A stretch of 57,206 nucleotides of DNA, counting the filler, from Dugesia japonica (Eukaryota): NCBI GenBank assembly GCA_001938525.1. It is 4 parts of 4 records of this genome, joined end to end, with 100 filler letters (N's around TTAATTAATTAA, not from the genome) between each part and the next. Parts side by side here need not be neighbours in the genome. Positions count along the whole stretch, not along the records: positions 1 to 12,545 come from MQRL01628209.1; 3 more parts are not named here. One strand, given 5' to 3'. Below, one piece after another: positions 176-13,692 of this stretch (its first letter is position 1; every line of letters begins with the position of its first letter). Both the position numbers and the translations under genes were made by a program. A model generated the notes under the pieces. That model saw nothing but the letters and a program-made list of their open reading frames with translations. It was not told the DNA's origin and made no database searches.

Positions 176-340
176 GAAAATTACTATTGTAAAAATAAAT
201 ATTGAATGAATCAAAAAGTCAATTCCTGACGAAGACAAAGTCGAAATATAGAATTATTATCAAAAACCAAAAAAAAATTTTGATCGAAGCTTTTATTTTA
301 AATGAACTAAGTAAAAGAACTTTAACTCTCGACATACACA
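176..340 (+). mobile_element. Penelope-like pseudo-LTR / hammerhead-bearing short dispersed repeat
   Basis: Contains the hammerhead followed by TTTGATCGAAGCTTTTATTTTAAATGAA. The same motif recurs at 5008-5043 (-), 5067-5102, 9868-9894, 13722-13747 and about 47805-47835. Confidence 0.6.
221..255 (+). ncRNA. Minimal type I hammerhead ribozyme, Penelope-like element type (copy 1)
   Basis: AATTC (stem I)-CTGACGA-A-GAC aaa GTC (stem II)-GAAA-TATA-GAATT (stem I'). The CUGANGA/GAAA core is intact, stem III is vestigial and there is an extra A after A9, as in PLE hammerheads. Confidence 0.8.
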
Positions 341-4690: not shown

Positions 4691-5007
4691 CAATGAACCC
4701 TTTCAGGGAAAGAAACTGCTCAGCCTCTAATGGTGCATTATGGTACGTAAATAAAACATTTCTACTGGAATAATTTTAATCAGTGGTATTTCACAGAAAA
4801 ACCCCAGCTCATAATCTATATTTATAGTGTACTATAAATACAAAATAATCATTTTAAAAATGTGGAAAGCCACAAAACACGGGTTTTAGATTTTTTTTTA
4901 ATTCTCGAGAAACCCTGGAGCAAATCCATATTTACAAGAAAATGTTTTTTTTCAACATGTTTAAATTTAAAATTATATTTATTAAGTAATTCAAACTTAG
5001 TTTTGAA

Positions 5008-5102
5008 TTTCATTAATATAAAAGCTTCGATCAAATTATTTTTACTCTTGATATTATTTCAAAAACAAAAATAATTTGATCGAAGTTTTTATTTGAATGA
5101 AT
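5008..5102. repeat. Inverted pair of Penelope-like pLTR ends (36-bp arms, 23-bp spacer)
   Basis: 5008-5043 is the near reverse complement of 5067-5102 (AAAAATAATTTGATCGAAG(C/T)TTTTAT..AATGAA). Confidence 0.75.
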
Positions 5103-5608
5103 TCTGAAAAACGATCCGTAGTTATGTCCAATAATTATTCTCGCAATAATTGTAATTGTAAAATTAGTTTTAAATTTAATATTTAAATTTTTTCTTACCC
5201 GTTTTGATGATAATTTAATTATCATAATTGCTAATCCATCATTGTTAATGCCACAATAATTCAGAAAATAATAACTTTATGATACTCGAATTTTAAAAAA
5301 AATCAATAAATGATATTATCAATTCAAATCAATGATAATAATAATATAGTTTGAAGCTGGTTTGTTTTGAATAACAGTAGCAAAACTTTGATAAATTGTT
5401 CGTATGTCTACACAACTATTATAATAGTAATGAATTTTGTTGTACAGGTTGTCAAGAATAAGAAGAATAAACAATGGATAGTGTGTACTAGAAAGCTAAT
5501 GTATTGTTAAATGATAATTGGTTTGTTTGTATTCATTAAAAAAGAAAATTTTTCACGAACAGCGAATTGTATAATTTTAATCAATTTTATTCCAAATTAA
5601 ATTCCAAA

Positions 5609-8600
5609 ATGTCATGGCAAAGCGTTTCTATTCCAGATCATATTAAATTTGCTATTGGTGGCTCGTCAGGGTAGAATTTGATGTTTATATAATATATTAA
5701 TGAGTCAACTGAATATTTTAATGTTTAAAGAATACTAACAACTCTTATTGTGCAACCTCTAGATTTTGTTAAAACTCGAATGCAAGTCAGCGGTTAATGA
5801 ATTTGATTAGAGTTTGTAAAAATTACTTTACTATTAATAGGCCAAGATGGTCATCGGAAATTTTATTCCAATAGTTGTGATGCAATCAAACAAATAACCA
5901 AAAATGAAGGAATTTTATCAATATATTCCGGGTAAAATATTTATTTAATAAATAATTTTATTAAGATTTCACTGAAATGAATATATTAAAATTAATATTA
6001 AAAATGAAAATTAATAATATTTGTATAATTTTAATTTTAACATAAAAAACTGTTTTTTTATAATATGATATTATATAATATTGGTAATATTAAAAAAAGC
6101 GAATGCTCAAAAAGAATAATTAATATTCCAATTCATTTGTAATTAATAGGGTAACCCAATGCAACTTATTGCAAATATTATGCAACATTTTTAAATAAGT
6201 GCATTTTTTATTATTTTATTTGTTTTAATTTTACCCATATGACATCTAATTCAAACTCAATCGCCAGAAACCAAGCAAAATATGTGAAACAATGTAAAAA
6301 AGAATATATTATGGGAGTAAATGGAAGTTTATCTTGCATTCTTTGTAATAAAAATGCAATAAGCTTTTATACTTGCACCTGTTGGATTGCCCTAGTAATT
6401 AATAACAATTTCGAAAGATTTTAAAATTGTATTGATTGATAGAATACTTATTGAAATAAGAAGCACTTAAACAAAAGTGAAATTATTTCAATTATATTAC
6501 TTAAATTAAAAATAAATTCTAGTCATAGTTAAAGTTTAAAACATTGATTTTAATAATAAACCATTAAAAATAAACCATTATTCTTTTATCTTGCTTCACT
6601 GTTCTTGTCATATATGATTCGGAATAACTCTCATTTGGAAGCTTTCATACGCGTTTTGAGTGCTGAAAGTGTAACCTGTACAAAAATTCATCAGACCATA
6701 TTAACTTTTTCCATTCTTCTAACTCCAACTTAAATGCTCTTTTGCCTATGCCAAATGTTCATTCTTATTAAACACTGACACTAACGGTTTTCACACCTAT
6801 AATGGGAATAACCAGCTTCGTGTAATCTGTTGTGGATAGTTTGTGGTGAGATATTCACATTTAGATTTCTTTTGATTTGTTTCGCCTAAATAATCCGACC
6901 ACTTATTGCGACAGACACAATATTTTGATCTTCAGTATTGGTCGTTTTACTTTGATTTCCAGTAAATTTTACGTTCGCAATTTCCAGTTGCTTTGTAATC
7001 TTTAAGAAAGGTAGCGACTGTCGATTAAGCTTTCTCCATTTTCTTTATTATTTCTCTCCCAGATAATCCGAAATTTGAATATACTACAATCTGTCCTTTT
7101 CAAAATTAGTTAGCTTTACCATTGATATAAATGCACCATCTATACTATTTATATTTACGGAAAACAATACAAAACAAATACTTGTTCAGTTTATTTGATT
7201 TAATCGATTTCACAGCTAATCTATATGAAATTTTAAGTGATAGAATTTTTATTAAATGGTTTCAAGTAATTTGTCTTATTTGGATAATAAATGGATCTTT
7301 TTTTGTATATACACCCCACTTTTTACACGGTAGANACGATCCAATAAAATTCATGTAAAAAACGATACAATAATAGTAAAATTGAAGAGGCGTTCCTCAA
7401 CTTTAAAAAGTAGTGTAAGATTAAAAAAGAGACGGTATGTAATCGACGAGATCGTGAAAAAAATCATGAAAAAATCGACTAATTACATCGTCAACTTTGT
7501 ATCCTTAATAAAGTGCTAATTTTACATTCTGCAAAACATTATCTTAATTATGAAAAAATATAAAATTAAATGAAACGTTTATTGATGATAGTGAGAATTG
7601 GCGTATGTGTTTACAACCGATTGTTTACAAAAGTCGGGTTCTTCACCGAAAATGTTTGGAAATAAAGAAAATTGTTAGATGAGTTTGGAGTACTCGTCGG
7701 ATCATTAATATCAAAACTCGATTCCATAGCAAAATTTATTCACAAACAAAACTATAACATCATTATTTGTTTATTCAAACAAATTAAAACCCATGCTTCA
7801 ATTGGAAATTATTTTCTAATAAATTTAATATTTTAGATTAAATGTTTATTTAAAATAATTCCAAAATTTAAAGAAAATAATTATCTGTTATCAAAATCTC
7901 ATTTAAAATTTTCACAAAATTTCAAAGCAAACAATGATTTGTTATTAAAATATTTATTTTTAATTTTCAAAATTTTAAAACAAAATTGTAGTTTCTAAAA
8001 ATCTACAATAAATTGTGTATAAAAATATTTGAATTAATCTTTAACTACTCATAATTTTTGTATCAAAACTTTAATTTAATTTACTTTAATTTCTTGATTA
8101 ATTTGTGGCTTTCAATTTTTAAATAAAAGATTTTTAAAAAAATAATTTCCAATCAAAGAACAAAAATTTCAACTCGCTTTTCAAAACATACTCACAAAAA
8201 TTATTTTGGATTTCATTTTTAAATGTTTCAGTTATGATTTTTTATAGATTATTTTAAACTATTTTTTACTTAGCAACGCAAATACTAGCTAGCTACATTT
8301 CTAGCTACTAGATTTTCTGGAGAATTTCTATGAAATTTTGATAATGAAATTTATTGCTTCATTCGAAATATTTTAGCTTATAATTTTATTTTTAAGTTTT
8401 TTTTTAGTCCATTGGTAAAATTTTTTTTTAAAAAATACATTTGGTTTATTTATTCCATTACTTTGAATTGATTAATTCATTAAAATGCTTATTAAGTTTT
8501 CTTATCAATTTACAAAATTGATTACATCGTGATATTTAAATTTGATTGGTTGCAAGTCAGTTTATATTGATTTTATATAAATAGAATTATATTAACTGAA

Positions 8601-11424
8601 CAATAATAATTAAAGTAGAATATTAATTGAAAATTTTAACATGAAATTCATGTGTGAGTTATTATAAAAATTTAAAATTATTAAACCAAAACATTGGTTT
8701 AATCCTTTCATAGTCACTTTTAAATAATTACTTATTTACCTTTTTATGTGATATTCTAGAACTTTAAAATAAGCTAGATAAGTGGTCCCGAAACCTTTTT
8801 CGATCACGGACCCGTCAGCGTTCAAAATTTTTTTGTCGTGGACCACTAAGATTTTTTTTATATTAATTTATTGATAAACTTAATTTAAACCTTTTCTTTA
8901 TCAAATGACAAAAATGAATTTTTTTAAGCTATTTTATTAATTAATGAGAACCTTGTGCTTGTTTATCTTCAACTAGACGATTCTATCTGGTGATAATAGG
9001 AGATAATGAAACACAAAGTGCACTACTTTTTTTCAACCTTTGTATATTCGCGGGAAGACTGTAGGTGAATTTCTCAAAAGTATATAAATGAATTAAATTG
9101 AAATGTCCGTGTGGACCGGTGAAACTTTCTCCATGGACCAGGGGTTTGGGACCTTGGAGCTAGATGGTTTATCAGTTGCAGACCACCCTGTAATCAAAGA
9201 AGGCTCGTCGAAAAAAATACATTTGCAGAATTTTTTCGAATTAAATTTTATTTATGCATCATTATATTTTTACAAAAAAAATAATAAAAAGATACATAAT
9301 ACGGTCAATGTGGCATACAAATGAAGTCTACTAAAAAGTGTCCACCAACCGCAGCCTTTTAGACACCTCATTTTTGTCTTATTCGTTTGTTTAACTGAGG
9401 AAAGTCGAGATTGGTGCTTTTCAGGTGTTTCCAGTTCGCATCGGATTGATTGATTCTCTGCATGTTTTTGCCTTTTTAGTTTGCAGATCCTCAATATTTT
9501 CATTTTATTTTGGAGTTGTCGATAACATTTTTGTAGCTAATGGTGGAGACGGTTTTTACGTTGTTCAGGAGTGTTGGAGTCCATTTTGTCAACTGAAACA
9601 TTGACAATATTATCTATTTTACAAACAATTTTTCTTTGTTCATTTTATTATTATTTTTAAAATTTGTCGATTTTCTGTGCTCGTTTTTAAAATTATCCGC
9701 TTTCATAAATTTTTCTTGTTCCTTTTTTATATGACTTCATTGAAAGTTTTAAAATTATCATTATTGAAGTTGGCCATTTTTGTATTCTTTTCTTGGTCAT
9801 TTTCTGAATTATGAAGGAGACAATGGTTGAAAATTCGAATATCTACCAAAAAAGAAATAAAACAACATTTTGATCGAAGTTATTACTTTAATGATATTTT
9901 GTGGTGAATAAATAAATCCTTAATTATCTCGGGGTAGCCGATTTACGAATGGACTGCAAATTTGTTGGCAAAATATCTAGGAAAGTAATCCCTTCACAGA
10001 CTCCACTTTGAAAACCACTGGTCTAAATACACTGTCATTGGTGATTTTTTCTCAATACTTAATGACGCAACTCTTTGATCAAGAATCATCTGATTTTCGA
10101 TTACAGATGATATTTAATTTCTTCTAGAAAAGGATTTTTTCAAAAGCATCAAAAACTACTCATAAAGCTTAATTTTTATGGATGGTATCAATTTTCCAAA
10201 AAATACGGAAAGAACAGAGCGTAATGAATTTATTGAATTAAAATAAATATTAAGAAATTAAAATTTACAATTAAATTTAAACAAGATGGTGGCACGAATA
10301 GAGATTGTTCAGTCGAATGGATTTTGTTCATCAGTTAACTTGAATATTAACTAATCAGAAGTGTCCATTGTAGTAAACAAATTGCATGAGAGGATTAAGT
10401 AAAATTTCAGTTTAGTTTTAAAAGATAGAATTTATTGATTGAATGAATATTCTGTATGAGTAAGTGAATATATAAATAAAAAAAAGAATGCATCAGCTAG
10501 TAAAATATGGAACAACGACACTGGTATACCTTTTCTTTCAAAGTATAAGCTTTTTACCCAGTTGTATTATTCTTAACTCTCTAATCTTTGTAAAGTTATT
10601 AGTTATTACAAGTTCTCACGGATATTCCGCTGCACCCGTGTTGACACCAGATCTACTAGAAACGCATCAAAAAAGGATTTCACTATATCACTGATTTTGG
10701 AATAAGTTATAAGTTATAAAACATCTTAATAAAATAATTCATTAACGAATAGGTGTTTTTTACTGTATTTAATTTCACTCAAAGCTCATTTAGTTTTATA
10801 AATTTGCAACTCACTACGAGTGTTTATAAATACATTTGCTTTATCTATACGCTTTATTTAATTATATTGAATTTCAAATAAATCCCAATAAGAATGATTT
10901 ATGCCTAAATTTCTCTATGAATTAAATCTTCATTGTTTTATCAATTTCAGTTTGACAGCAGCCTTATTTCGACAAGCCACTTATACAACTGTTAGACTGG
11001 GCATTTATATGTCGTTGTATGAGAAATATTCAACCAAAAACCACCAACCAGATTTATCAATAAAACTTTTTGTTGCAATGATAGCCGGTTTGATTGGATC
11101 ATTAGTTGGTACCCCTTCGGAAATAGCTTTAGTCAGAATGACTGCTGACGGAATGTTATCGAAATGATATAATTATATGATAATTACGTTATTCATTTTT
11201 AGATTACCTTCGGATCAAAAAAGAAATTATAGAAATGTTTTTCATGCACTTGCTTGTATTATTGAAGAAGATGGATTTTTTGGCTTATGGAAAGTAATAA
11301 ATTAAAAATCAAAACATTTCATTTTAGTCTTAGTCAGTCTTACCAACCATGTGCAGGGGAATCATCGTAAATCTTATTCAATTAGCATCATATTCCCAAA
11401 CTAAGCAAGGACTCATTGAAATCG
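5609..11424 (+). CDS. SLC25A11: Mitochondrial 2-oxoglutarate/malate carrier, 3'-partial; exons 5609-5670, 5731-5792, 5841-5931, 10951-11154, 11203-11293, 11334-11424
   Basis: The spliced translation (200 aa) includes KFAIGGSSGILTTLIVQPLDFVKTRMQVSG, EGILSIYSGLTAALFRQATYTTVRLGIY, GTPSEIALVRMTADGILPSDQKRNYRNVFHAL and LPTMCRGIIVNLIQLASYSQTKQ, diagnostic of the oxoglutarate carrier. All introns are GT-AG and in phase. The third carrier repeat was not found in the window. Confidence 0.93.
6147..6394 (+). mobile_element. hAT non-autonomous element (248 bp) in SLC25A11 intron 3
   Basis: TIRs TAGGGTAACCCAA / TTGGATTGCCCTA and a perfect 8-bp TSD GTAATTAA (6139-6146, 6395-6402). Retains a short ORF start with CxxC (LSCILCNK). 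Confidence 0.85.
6600..7122 (-). mobile_element. Tc1-family transposase remnant
   Basis: MVKLTNFEK...STVATFLKDYKATGN...KTTNTEDQNI...NISPQTIHNRLHEAG...EEWKKLIWSDE, i.e. paired-like HTH, second HTH and first catalytic D. Frameshifted. Confidence 0.88.
7672..7822 (+). repeat. Dispersed repeat (other copies about 33488-33600, 35165-35308, 35597-35740)
   Basis: Shared TGTTAGATGAGTTTGG...GGATCATTAATATCAAAACTCGATTCCATAGCAAAAT. The 7.7-kb and 35-kb copies also share CATGCTTCAATTGG.AATTATTTTCT. Confidence 0.75.
8780..9157. mobile_element. hAT (Charlie-type) MITE
   Basis: Imperfect TIRs AAGTGGTCCCGAAACC / GGTTTGGGACCTTGG and a perfect 8-bp TSD AGCTAGAT (8772-8779, 9158-9165). Confidence 0.85.
9806..9894 (+). 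mobile_element. Decayed copy of the hammerhead-bearing repeat
   Basis: AATTATGAAGGAGACAATGGTTGAAAATTCGAAT (eroded core) followed by TTTGATCGAAGTTATTACTTTAATGA. Confidence 0.5.
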
Positions 11425-11519
11425 GTAAACTTTTAATTTATTTCGAATGTGATATGACCTTTTGAAAAATGTTTGATTTGTTTGGGTCTTGGATTAGATT
11501 TCCATATAATACTTGTGTT

Positions 11520-13655: not shown

Positions 13656-13692
13656 CAATTCCTGACGAAGACAAGGTCGAAATATTGAATTG
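13656..13692 (+). ncRNA. Minimal type I hammerhead ribozyme (copy 2)
   Basis: CAATTC-CTGACGA-A-GAC aag GTC-GAAA-TATT-GAATTG, with a 6-bp stem I and an intact core. Confidence 0.8.

What the first reader, a model, noticed from the sequence alone, without database searches (positions are those of the whole stretch)
221..255. Intact minimal hammerhead ribozyme in a short dispersed repeat
Seen: the complete CUGACGA/GAAA core, a 5-bp stem I, a 3-bp stem II and almost no stem III. A second intact copy at 13656-13692 differs only in the stem II loop and at the cleavage-site base, and a decayed copy lies near 9810. Known: minimal type I hammerheads mark pseudo-LTRs of Penelope-like retroelements and retrozymes and are thought to cleave as dimers. 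Inference: six motif copies in 57 kb with no PLE RT or GIY-YIG coding sequence seen suggest an abundant non-autonomous self-cleaving retroelement family.
Basis: partly seen in the sequence, partly recalled or inferred. Interest (0 to 1): 0.75.

Follow-up and report, generated by a model that had tools for sequence, protein, structure and literature searches.

The report
Minimal hammerhead motif in retro-copy fragment
A 35-base sequence at 221-255 has every published hallmark of the tiny 'minimal' hammerhead ribozymes carried by Penelope-like retrotransposons and sits in a short, truncated mobile-element copy, so it is most likely a real but ordinary relic of a well-known kind, not a new system.

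Summary
Stem I has 5 bp (221-225/251-255). The core CUGACGA is at 226-232, followed by one unpaired A (233). Stem II has 3 bp with an AAA loop (234-242). GAAA is at 243-246, followed by a self-complementary AUAU, with A250 as the cleavage-site base.

No Rfam model detects it. It does carry three extra traits published for Penelope-like-element (PLE) minimal hammerheads:
- a nucleotide between A9 and G10.1;
- a G10.1-C11.1 pair;
- a palindromic 15.2/16.2.

A descriptor requiring all of these hit only this site and none of 10,000 shuffles. The calculated chance rate is about 1-3 x 10^-4 per Mb.

The motif belongs to an 86-nt repeat unit (221-306). Copy c3 (9807-9895) is a decayed full unit flanked by a 7/8 direct repeat. 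Copy c2 (5009-5101) is a head-to-head pair of 5'-truncated copies that begin 0-6 nt from the predicted cut. All copies share the same 3' end. This pattern of 5' truncation and inverted adjacency is typical of PLE insertions.

No RT or GIY-YIG coding sequence lies in the piece. Family abundance, covariation and cleavage could not be tested. Verdict: probably a genuine but inert solo relic, a new member of a known kind.

The parts
221..255 (+). Minimal type-I hammerhead motif. Stem I 221-225/251-255; core 226-232; unpaired A 233; stem II 234-242; GAAA 243-246; palindromic AUAU 246-249; A17 at 250. Predicted cut 250|251.
   Evidence: Sequence read. Only hit of the relaxed and strict descriptors. 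The hammerhead fold is -2.0 kcal/mol against an MFE of -2.4, about 15% of the ensemble.
221..306 (+). Repeat unit copy c1: hammerhead, A-rich tract, then a conserved core ending in AATGAA. It may extend further 5'.
   Evidence: Local alignments to c3 and to both c2 arms all end at 306. There is no flanking direct repeat at 221/306 (2/8).
5009..5060 (-). c2 left arm: inverted 5'-truncated copy equivalent to c1 251-306, without the hammerhead core.
   Evidence: c1 251-306 to 5060-5009. The arms are 85% complementary. Hairpin MFE -38.1, z=-9.5.
5053..5101 (+). c2 right arm: 5'-truncated copy equivalent to c1 253-306. It overlaps the left arm by a few bases at the axis (5055).
   Evidence: the repeat finder D1/I1.
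9807..9895 (+). c3: decayed full unit equivalent to c1 221-306. Its hammerhead part is no longer a match to the descriptor.
   Evidence: alignment; nhmmer E=0.0017. 25 of the 35 motif positions are identical to c1, with 3 indels.
9799..9806 (.). Left copy of the candidate 8-bp target-site duplication of c3. The partner is at 9896-9903, 7/8 identical.
   Evidence: Such a match occurs at 0.3% of random sites with exact bounds, and at 4% if the bounds may shift by 2 nt.
9896..9903 (.). Right copy of the candidate target-site duplication of c3.
5001..5008 (.). Weak candidate target-site duplication of the c2 pair. The partner is at 5102-5109, 6/8 identical.
   Evidence: 2% of random sites with exact bounds, 11-22% with shifted bounds. 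Weak on its own.

Best explanation
Positions 221-255 are a genuine minimal type-I hammerhead of the kind carried in the pseudo-LTRs of Penelope-like retroelements. Here it is preserved inside a dead, 5'-truncated retro-copy (221-306, possibly longer on the 5' side).

Inferred mechanism in the source element: two motifs on one multimeric transcript, or on two transcripts, pair through the self-complementary AUAU (246-249) to build an extended helix III. Each RNA is then cut after A250, so the downstream product begins at G251. Copies are made by target-primed reverse transcription from a fixed 3' start. That gives a common 3' end (c1 306) and variable 5' ends.

The copies in the window fit this as follows:
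- c3 (9807-9895) is an older insertion with an 8-bp target duplication.
- c2 (5009-5101) is a head-to-head pair of copies whose 5' ends lie at or within 6 nt of the cut site.

At this locus the motif is solo, so it is most likely inert.

Shown: the motif, its improbability by chance, the unit boundaries, the flanking repeat and the inverted pair. Inferred: ribozyme activity, dimer mode, PLE parentage and reverse-transcription origin.
For: 1. Three traits were listed by Cervera & De la Pena 2014 (PMC4209133) as emerging in PLE min-HHRs without being demanded by their descriptor. [quoted passage not shown] All three are present here.
2. A descriptor requiring these traits hits only 221-255 and none of 10,000 shuffles. 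The analytic rate is 1.3-3.1e-4 per Mb. Published genomes hold thousands of real min-HHRs.
3. The motif is part of a repeat. c1 221-306 aligns to c3 9807-9895.
4. c3 is flanked exactly at those bounds by a 7/8 direct repeat (p about 0.003-0.04). The hammerhead segment therefore belongs to the inserted unit.
5. All copies end at the same 3' position while their 5' ends differ.
6. c2 is an inverted pair of 5'-truncated copies joined at their 5' ends. PLE insertions are described as highly 5'-truncated, often with an adjacent inverted 5'-truncated copy (PMC8557442). A purified PLE protein extends both DNA strands (PMC11167929).
7. The c2 arms begin 0-6 nt from the predicted cut.
8. The distance from the cut to the unit's 3' end is 56 nt. 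In the anole PLE the corresponding distance, from the HHR cut to the start of reverse transcription, is about 85-92 nt, so the scale is similar.
Against: - No Rfam hammerhead model reports it.
- Helix II has only 3 bp with a triloop. The published PLE examples that were read have 6-8 bp.
- All helices are short and mostly A-U. The hammerhead fold (-2.0 kcal/mol) is not the MFE. It would fail the -5 kcal/mol 'active' filter used in a 2026 preprint.
- Only one intact motif could be examined; c3 is decayed and c2 lacks the motif.
- There is no tandem partner, no pseudo-LTR structure and no RT/GIY-YIG remnant in 12.5 kb.
- No further copies were found in any searchable collection, so covariation is untested.
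- The strict descriptor was assembled after the motif had been seen, although from published criteria.
- The c2 flanking repeat is weak (6/8).
Confidence: 0.6

Rival explanations
1. The repeat is a non-ribozyme element: a foldback or MITE-like DNA transposon relic, or another short AT-rich repeat. The hammerhead look of c1 is then a chance arrangement with no RNA function.
For: - c2 is an almost perfect 110-nt hairpin (z=-9.5) with a possible 8-bp flanking repeat. That resembles a palindromic MITE.
- No Rfam hit and marginal folding energy.
- The other copies lack an intact motif.
- The hammerhead part of c3 is not significantly similar on its own (E=20).
Against: - The chance rate of a motif with all the PLE-type traits is about 1e-4 per Mb.
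- c3 has no terminal inverted repeat, yet it is flanked by a 7/8 direct repeat that encloses the hammerhead segment.
- A shared 3' end with variable 5' ends is a reverse-transcription signature, not a cut-and-paste one.
- No transposase remnant was found.
Confidence: 0.2
2. The hammerhead is real, but the element is not a PLE fragment. It would be an independent very small non-autonomous element, either SINE-like or a retrozyme-like unit of about 86 nt propagated through a cleaved, possibly circular, RNA.
For: - c3 is a complete 89-nt insertion with a target duplication. Its 5' end coincides with the first base of stem I.
- The c2 arms start at the cut site, as expected for copies of a self-cleaved RNA.
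- No coding sequence is nearby.
- Animal retrozymes are thought to derive from PLE pseudo-LTRs.
Against: - Known animal retrozymes are 170-400 nt tandem repeats with canonical hammerheads that have loop-loop contacts. No tandem array is present here, and the motif is the minimal type.
- An 86-nt unit may simply be the detectable 3' end of a longer element. c1 shows no target duplication at 221, so it may extend further.
Confidence: 0.15

Closest known systems
Minimal hammerhead ribozymes (min-HHRs) in pseudo-LTRs of Penelope-like elements (Cervera & De la Pena 2014, PMC4209133)
   Same: - Type-I topology.
- Helix I of 4-5 bp with no defined loop 1.
- Unpaired nucleotide between A9 and G10.1.
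- G10.1-C11.1 pair.
- Almost no helix III, with palindromic 15.2/16.2, so presumed dimer action.
- Mostly found as dispersed single motifs from truncated elements.
   Different: - Helix II is only 3 bp with a triloop, against 6-8 bp in the Schistosoma and Drosophila virilis examples described.
- There is no pseudo-LTR, tandem partner or RT/GIY-YIG frame in the piece.
- Family consensus and covariation are unknown.
PLE insertion architecture (Craig et al. 2021, PMC8557442; Frangieh et al. 2024, PMC11167929)
   Same: - Strong 5' truncation with a fixed 3' end.
- An inverted 5'-truncated copy joined head-to-head (c2).
- Insertion into AT-rich DNA.
- Hammerhead a few tens of nucleotides upstream of the 3' insertion end.
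   Different: - No 30-40 bp 'tail' could be identified.
- In the anole element no RNA ends were seen at the hammerhead cut and cleavage was dispensable in vitro. Here the c2 arms begin at the predicted cut.
Animal non-LTR retrozymes and Schistosoma SINE-like hammerhead repeats
   Same: Short non-coding AT-rich repeats carrying type-I hammerheads with a weak helix III. They are thought to be PLE-derived (preprint 10.64898/2026.07.22.740005).
   Different: Those are 170-400 nt units in tandem arrays, with canonical helices (6 and 4 bp) and loop 1-loop 2 contacts. Here there are solo copies of 50-90 nt with a minimal motif.

Membership tests
Hammerhead ribozyme (catalytic core) | Conserved core C3 U4 G5 A6 N7 G8 A9 ... 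G12 A13 A14, A15.1-U16.1, H17 not G | tested here: met
   Read directly at 226-232, 243-246 and 249-250; descriptor hit.
Hammerhead ribozyme (catalytic core) | Three helices around the core in type-I order | tested here: inconclusive
   Helix I has 5 bp and helix II 3 bp. Helix III cannot form in a monomer (1 bp with a 2-nt loop) and needs a partner. The hammerhead fold is -2.0 kcal/mol, about 15% of the ensemble.
Hammerhead ribozyme (catalytic core) | Match to a curated covariance model (Rfam Hammerhead_1/3/II/HH9/HH10) | tested here: not met
   No hit at gathering or at E<=10. The only hit was RAGATH-1-hammerhead, 12.1 bits against 56.3. Minimal variants were originally found with descriptors, not with these models.
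Hammerhead ribozyme (catalytic core) | Site-specific self-cleavage | not testable with these tools
   No expression or biochemical data are available. The c2 arms starting 0-6 nt from the predicted cut are only an indirect hint.
PLE-type minimal hammerhead | [quoted passage not shown] | tested here: met
   A233; criterion from PMC4209133.
PLE-type minimal hammerhead | Conserved G10.1-C11.1 pair | tested here: met
   G234-C242.
PLE-type minimal hammerhead | Palindromic 15.2-16.2 (and loop 3 if present), allowing a dimeric helix III | tested here: met
   A246-U249 reads AUAU, which is self-complementary. The duplex is predicted to be very weak (-0.4 kcal/mol).
PLE-type minimal hammerhead | Genome holds consensus families with covariation and compensatory changes | not testable with these tools
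   No other genomic copies could be retrieved. Only c3 is available, and it is decayed.
Penelope-like element | ORF with telomerase-like RT and GIY-YIG endonuclease | tested here: not met
   Pfam scan of all 105 ORFs of at least 36 aa found only Mito_carr and two weak unrelated hits. This is expected if the copies are short 5'-truncated fragments.
Penelope-like element | Pseudo-LTRs from partial tandem insertion | tested here: not met
   No tandem array of the unit. There is only a marginal resemblance of 197-217 to 244-266 (p about 0.02), next to an N run.
Penelope-like element | High 5' truncation with a common 3' end; adjacent inverted 5'-truncated copies | tested here: met
   All alignments end at c1 306. 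The 5' ends are at 221, 251 and 253. c2 is a head-to-head pair. Feature description from PMC8557442.
Animal non-LTR retrozyme | Tandem repeats of 170-400 nt, each unit with a type-I hammerhead | tested here: not met
   Tandem Repeats Finder shows no such array. The copies are solo and 4.8 kb apart.

The most novel reading that the evidence does not exclude
The head-to-head pair at 5009-5101 may be a genomic footprint of hammerhead cleavage in vivo. On this reading both arms start at the predicted cut because the reverse-transcribed RNA had already been self-cleaved. That would be natural evidence that PLE-type minimal hammerheads really process the template RNA. It would also suggest an unusually small element (an 86-nt unit with a 3-bp helix II).
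Probability: 0.12. Interest if true: 0.6.

Novelty: new member of a known kind. Interest (0 to 1): 0.3.

Why it matters
Minimal hammerheads occur by the thousands in many animal genomes and mark remnants of Penelope-like elements, so one more copy is not surprising. Two points are of modest interest.

First, the motif is at the small extreme of the class (3-bp helix II, all helices nearly pure A-U).

Second, the neighbouring inverted pair begins at the predicted cut site. If that were repeated genome-wide, it would bear on an open question: whether these weak ribozymes actually cleave the retroelement RNA in vivo. In vitro work on an anole PLE found cleavage dispensable and saw no RNA ends at the site (PMC11167929).

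Tried and rejected
- **Rfam scans** at gathering and permissive thresholds gave no usable hit.
- **A 4.8-kb tandem duplication** to explain the equal spacing of the three copies was rejected. There is no DNA or protein-level homology between the intervals and no elevated identity on that diagonal.
- **More copies from public collections:**
  - The joint hammerhead-plus-core pattern in viral contigs gave 69 chance hits with no similarity to the unit.
  - The repeat core in metagenome contigs gave 4 bacterial coding-sequence chance hits.
  - A word search with the ORF that happens to span the repeat found nothing.
- **Organism:**
  - An exact-product look-up of a window ORF was not on record.
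  - The carrier exon finds only a 53%-identical bee (Hylaeus volcanicus) OGC-like protein. The host is probably an arthropod or other invertebrate, but it remains unidentified.
  - That bee contig has no such repeat or motif.
- **Continuation of the c2 arms past the unit's 3' end into a new hammerhead start** (a circular or tandem template) is not significant.
- **Papers:** Lunse et al. 2017 on small PLE hammerheads is not held. No supplement text is held for the 2014 paper.

- The joined spliced model of the carrier gene was not built or searched; the exons were searched apart.
- The large representative protein search was not used, because no claim here rests on it.

**Handling of the copies**
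- Searches printed pairwise alignments of the natural copies as they stand.
- In my working reasoning I compared c3 with c1 position by position. This report gives counts only and names no change that would restore the decayed copy.

Full report
**1. Observation**

The piece is about 25% G+C, eukaryotic DNA. Positions 221-255 on the + strand read as follows:
- a 5-nt strand (221-225);
- CUGACGA (226-232);
- one extra A (233);
- a 3-bp hairpin G-C/A-U/C-G with loop AAA (234-242);
- GAAA (243-246);
- U-A-U (247-249) and A (250);
- the complement of the first strand (251-255).

In hammerhead numbering this is helix I (5 bp), C3-A9, an unpaired base, G10.1-C11.1 closing helix II, G12-A14, A15.1, U15.2, A16.2, U16.1 and A17. 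The scissile bond lies between 250 and 251. It omitted the extra A.

**2. Is it more than chance?**

- The bare core pattern is expected 0.56 times per window, so by itself it means nothing.
- A relaxed type-I descriptor finds only this site. It requires helix I of at least 4-5 bp, helix II of at least 3 bp, 0-1 inserted base, any short helix III and H17. It occurs in 5-27 of 3,000 dinucleotide shuffles.
- Cervera & De la Pena (PMC4209133) list traits that emerged in PLE minimal hammerheads without being part of their search descriptor. [quoted passage not shown] The motif has all three.
- A descriptor requiring them hits only 221-255 in the window and nothing in 10,000 shuffles, which amount to 124 Mb.
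- A calculation at this base composition gives 1.3-3.1 x 10^-4 expected matches per Mb on both strands. That is less than one per gigabase genome.
- The caveat is that I assembled the strict descriptor after seeing the motif, although from published criteria.
- Rfam covariance models do not report the motif. The only hit on 190-290 is RAGATH-1-hammerhead at 12.1 bits against a 56.3-bit cut-off.
- The hammerhead fold of the 35-mer is -2.0 kcal/mol against an MFE of -2.4, about 15% of the ensemble. Thermodynamics therefore neither supports nor excludes it. The AUAU duplex that would build a dimeric helix III is very weak.

**3. The repeat**

The repeat finder shows a conserved core at 262-301, 5058-5097 and 9852-9891. 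Local alignments define the unit:
- c1 221-306 aligns with c3 9807-9895 (nhmmer E=0.0017).
- Both arms of a 110-nt hairpin at 5001-5110 (85% complementary arms, z=-9.5) align with c1 251-306 and 253-306.

Three independent alignments therefore stop at the same 3' position (c1 306), while the 5' ends differ (221, 251, 253).

c3 is flanked, exactly at the homology bounds, by 8-mers identical at 7 of 8 positions. That is 0.3% of random sites at exact bounds, and 4% if the bounds may move by 2 nt. The c2 pair is flanked by 8-mers identical at 6 of 8 positions (2% exact, and weak if the bounds may move).

c3 has no terminal inverted repeat. In c3 the hammerhead part matches c1 at 25 of 35 positions with 3 indels and no longer satisfies the descriptor. 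I give counts only.

c1 has no flanking repeat at 221/306 (2 of 8), so it may extend further 5'. A 15-N run at 160-174 prevents looking further.

**4. What it most likely is**

The pattern has three parts:
- a common 3' end with variable 5' ends;
- a short target duplication;
- a head-to-head pair of 5'-truncated copies.

[quoted passage not shown] A purified PLE protein cleaves and extends both DNA strands (PMC11167929).

In the anole element, reverse transcription starts about 85-92 nt downstream of the hammerhead cut. Here the unit ends 56 nt downstream of the predicted cut.

The copies in the window are therefore best read as dead, severely 5'-truncated retro-copies of the 3'-terminal region of a hammerhead-bearing element.

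The ribozyme mechanism is inferred from the family. It involves dimerisation through the palindromic helix III and cleavage after A250.

The c2 arms begin 0-6 nt from the predicted cut. If truncation points were uniform over the 86-nt unit, this would happen about 8% of the time. It is a hint of cleavage before copying, not proof.

**5. What is absent**

- No RT, GIY-YIG, integrase or transposase signal occurs in any of the 105 ORFs of at least 36 aa.
- There is no tandem array of the unit.
- There is no second intact motif in the piece.

With no partner motif in the piece, cleavage at this locus is unlikely. 'Non-autonomous' and 'abundant' cannot be judged from 12.5 kb.

**6. Related sequences elsewhere**

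None could be obtained:
- viral contigs gave 69 chance matches;
- metagenome contigs gave 4 bacterial coding-sequence chance matches;
- the protein word search with the repeat-spanning ORF found nothing.

The searchable DNA collections do not hold eukaryotic genomes.

The only gene recognised is a mitochondrial carrier. Its exons lie within 10898-11462 on the + strand. The best relative is a bee OGC-like protein at 53% identity. The carrier exons were searched apart, and the joined spliced model was left out. The organism remains unidentified, probably an invertebrate.

**7. Rivals**

- **Chance motif in a MITE-like or foldback repeat.** The c2 hairpin, the lack of an Rfam hit and the weak folding speak for it. 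Against it are the very low chance rate of the full trait set, the c3 target duplication that encloses the hammerhead segment without terminal inverted repeats, and the shared 3' end.
- **A real hammerhead in an independent tiny SINE- or retrozyme-like element.** c3 is a complete 89-nt insertion that starts at the first base of helix I. However, known animal retrozymes are 170-400 nt tandem units with canonical hammerheads, and none of that is seen here.

**8. Verdict**

The feature is most likely a genuine but inert relic of a PLE-type minimal hammerhead, a new member of a known and very common kind.

Interest is modest. The one point worth following genome-wide is whether 5' ends of copies pile up at the predicted cut.

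Noticed in passing
window 221-306, 5009-5101, 9807-9895: The three repeat sites are spaced 4796 and 4794 nt apart start to start. The intervening 4.8-kb stretches share no detectable homology and the flanks differ. Post hoc, the chance is about 5 in 10,000. No explanation was found.
   Followed up: partly
window 197-217 (and N run 160-174): Just upstream of the motif, 197-217 resembles unit positions 244-266, the stretch spanning the predicted cut. The local score is 25, reached by 1.8% of random segments. This could be a remnant of a partial tandem copy, but the adjacent 15-N run prevents checking.
   Followed up: partly
window 10898-11462 (+): Exons of a mitochondrial carrier gene, 2-oxoglutarate/malate-carrier-like (Pfam Mito_carr). 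The best relative is 53% identical, from the bee Hylaeus volcanicus. A very short intron of about 48 nt (about 11155-11202) is implied by the reading frames.
   Followed up: partly
window 5001-5110: The head-to-head repeat pair folds as a near-perfect 110-nt hairpin (MFE -38.1 kcal/mol, z=-9.5). It draws a sub-threshold plant miRNA-precursor hit (MIR862_2, 20 bits against 71). If transcribed it could be a substrate for small-RNA pathways.
   Followed up: no
window 7848-7979 and 7700-8730: A 54-nt tandem repeat of 2.5 copies, 79% matches. It lies inside a long, loosely self-complementary AT-rich region (about 60% identity inverted self-matches).
   Followed up: no
window 11139-11218 (+), 11271-11371 (-): Sub-threshold C/D-box snoRNA-like matches in and around the carrier gene's intron: snoU83D at 22.9 bits against 55, and DdR2 at 23.7 bits against 80. 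Probably chance.
   Followed up: no
window 9097-9321: Open frames on both strands with non-AT-biased codon content, for example 9097-9321 (+) and 9096-9251 (-). This suggests an exon of an unidentified gene. No Pfam family was found.
   Followed up: no
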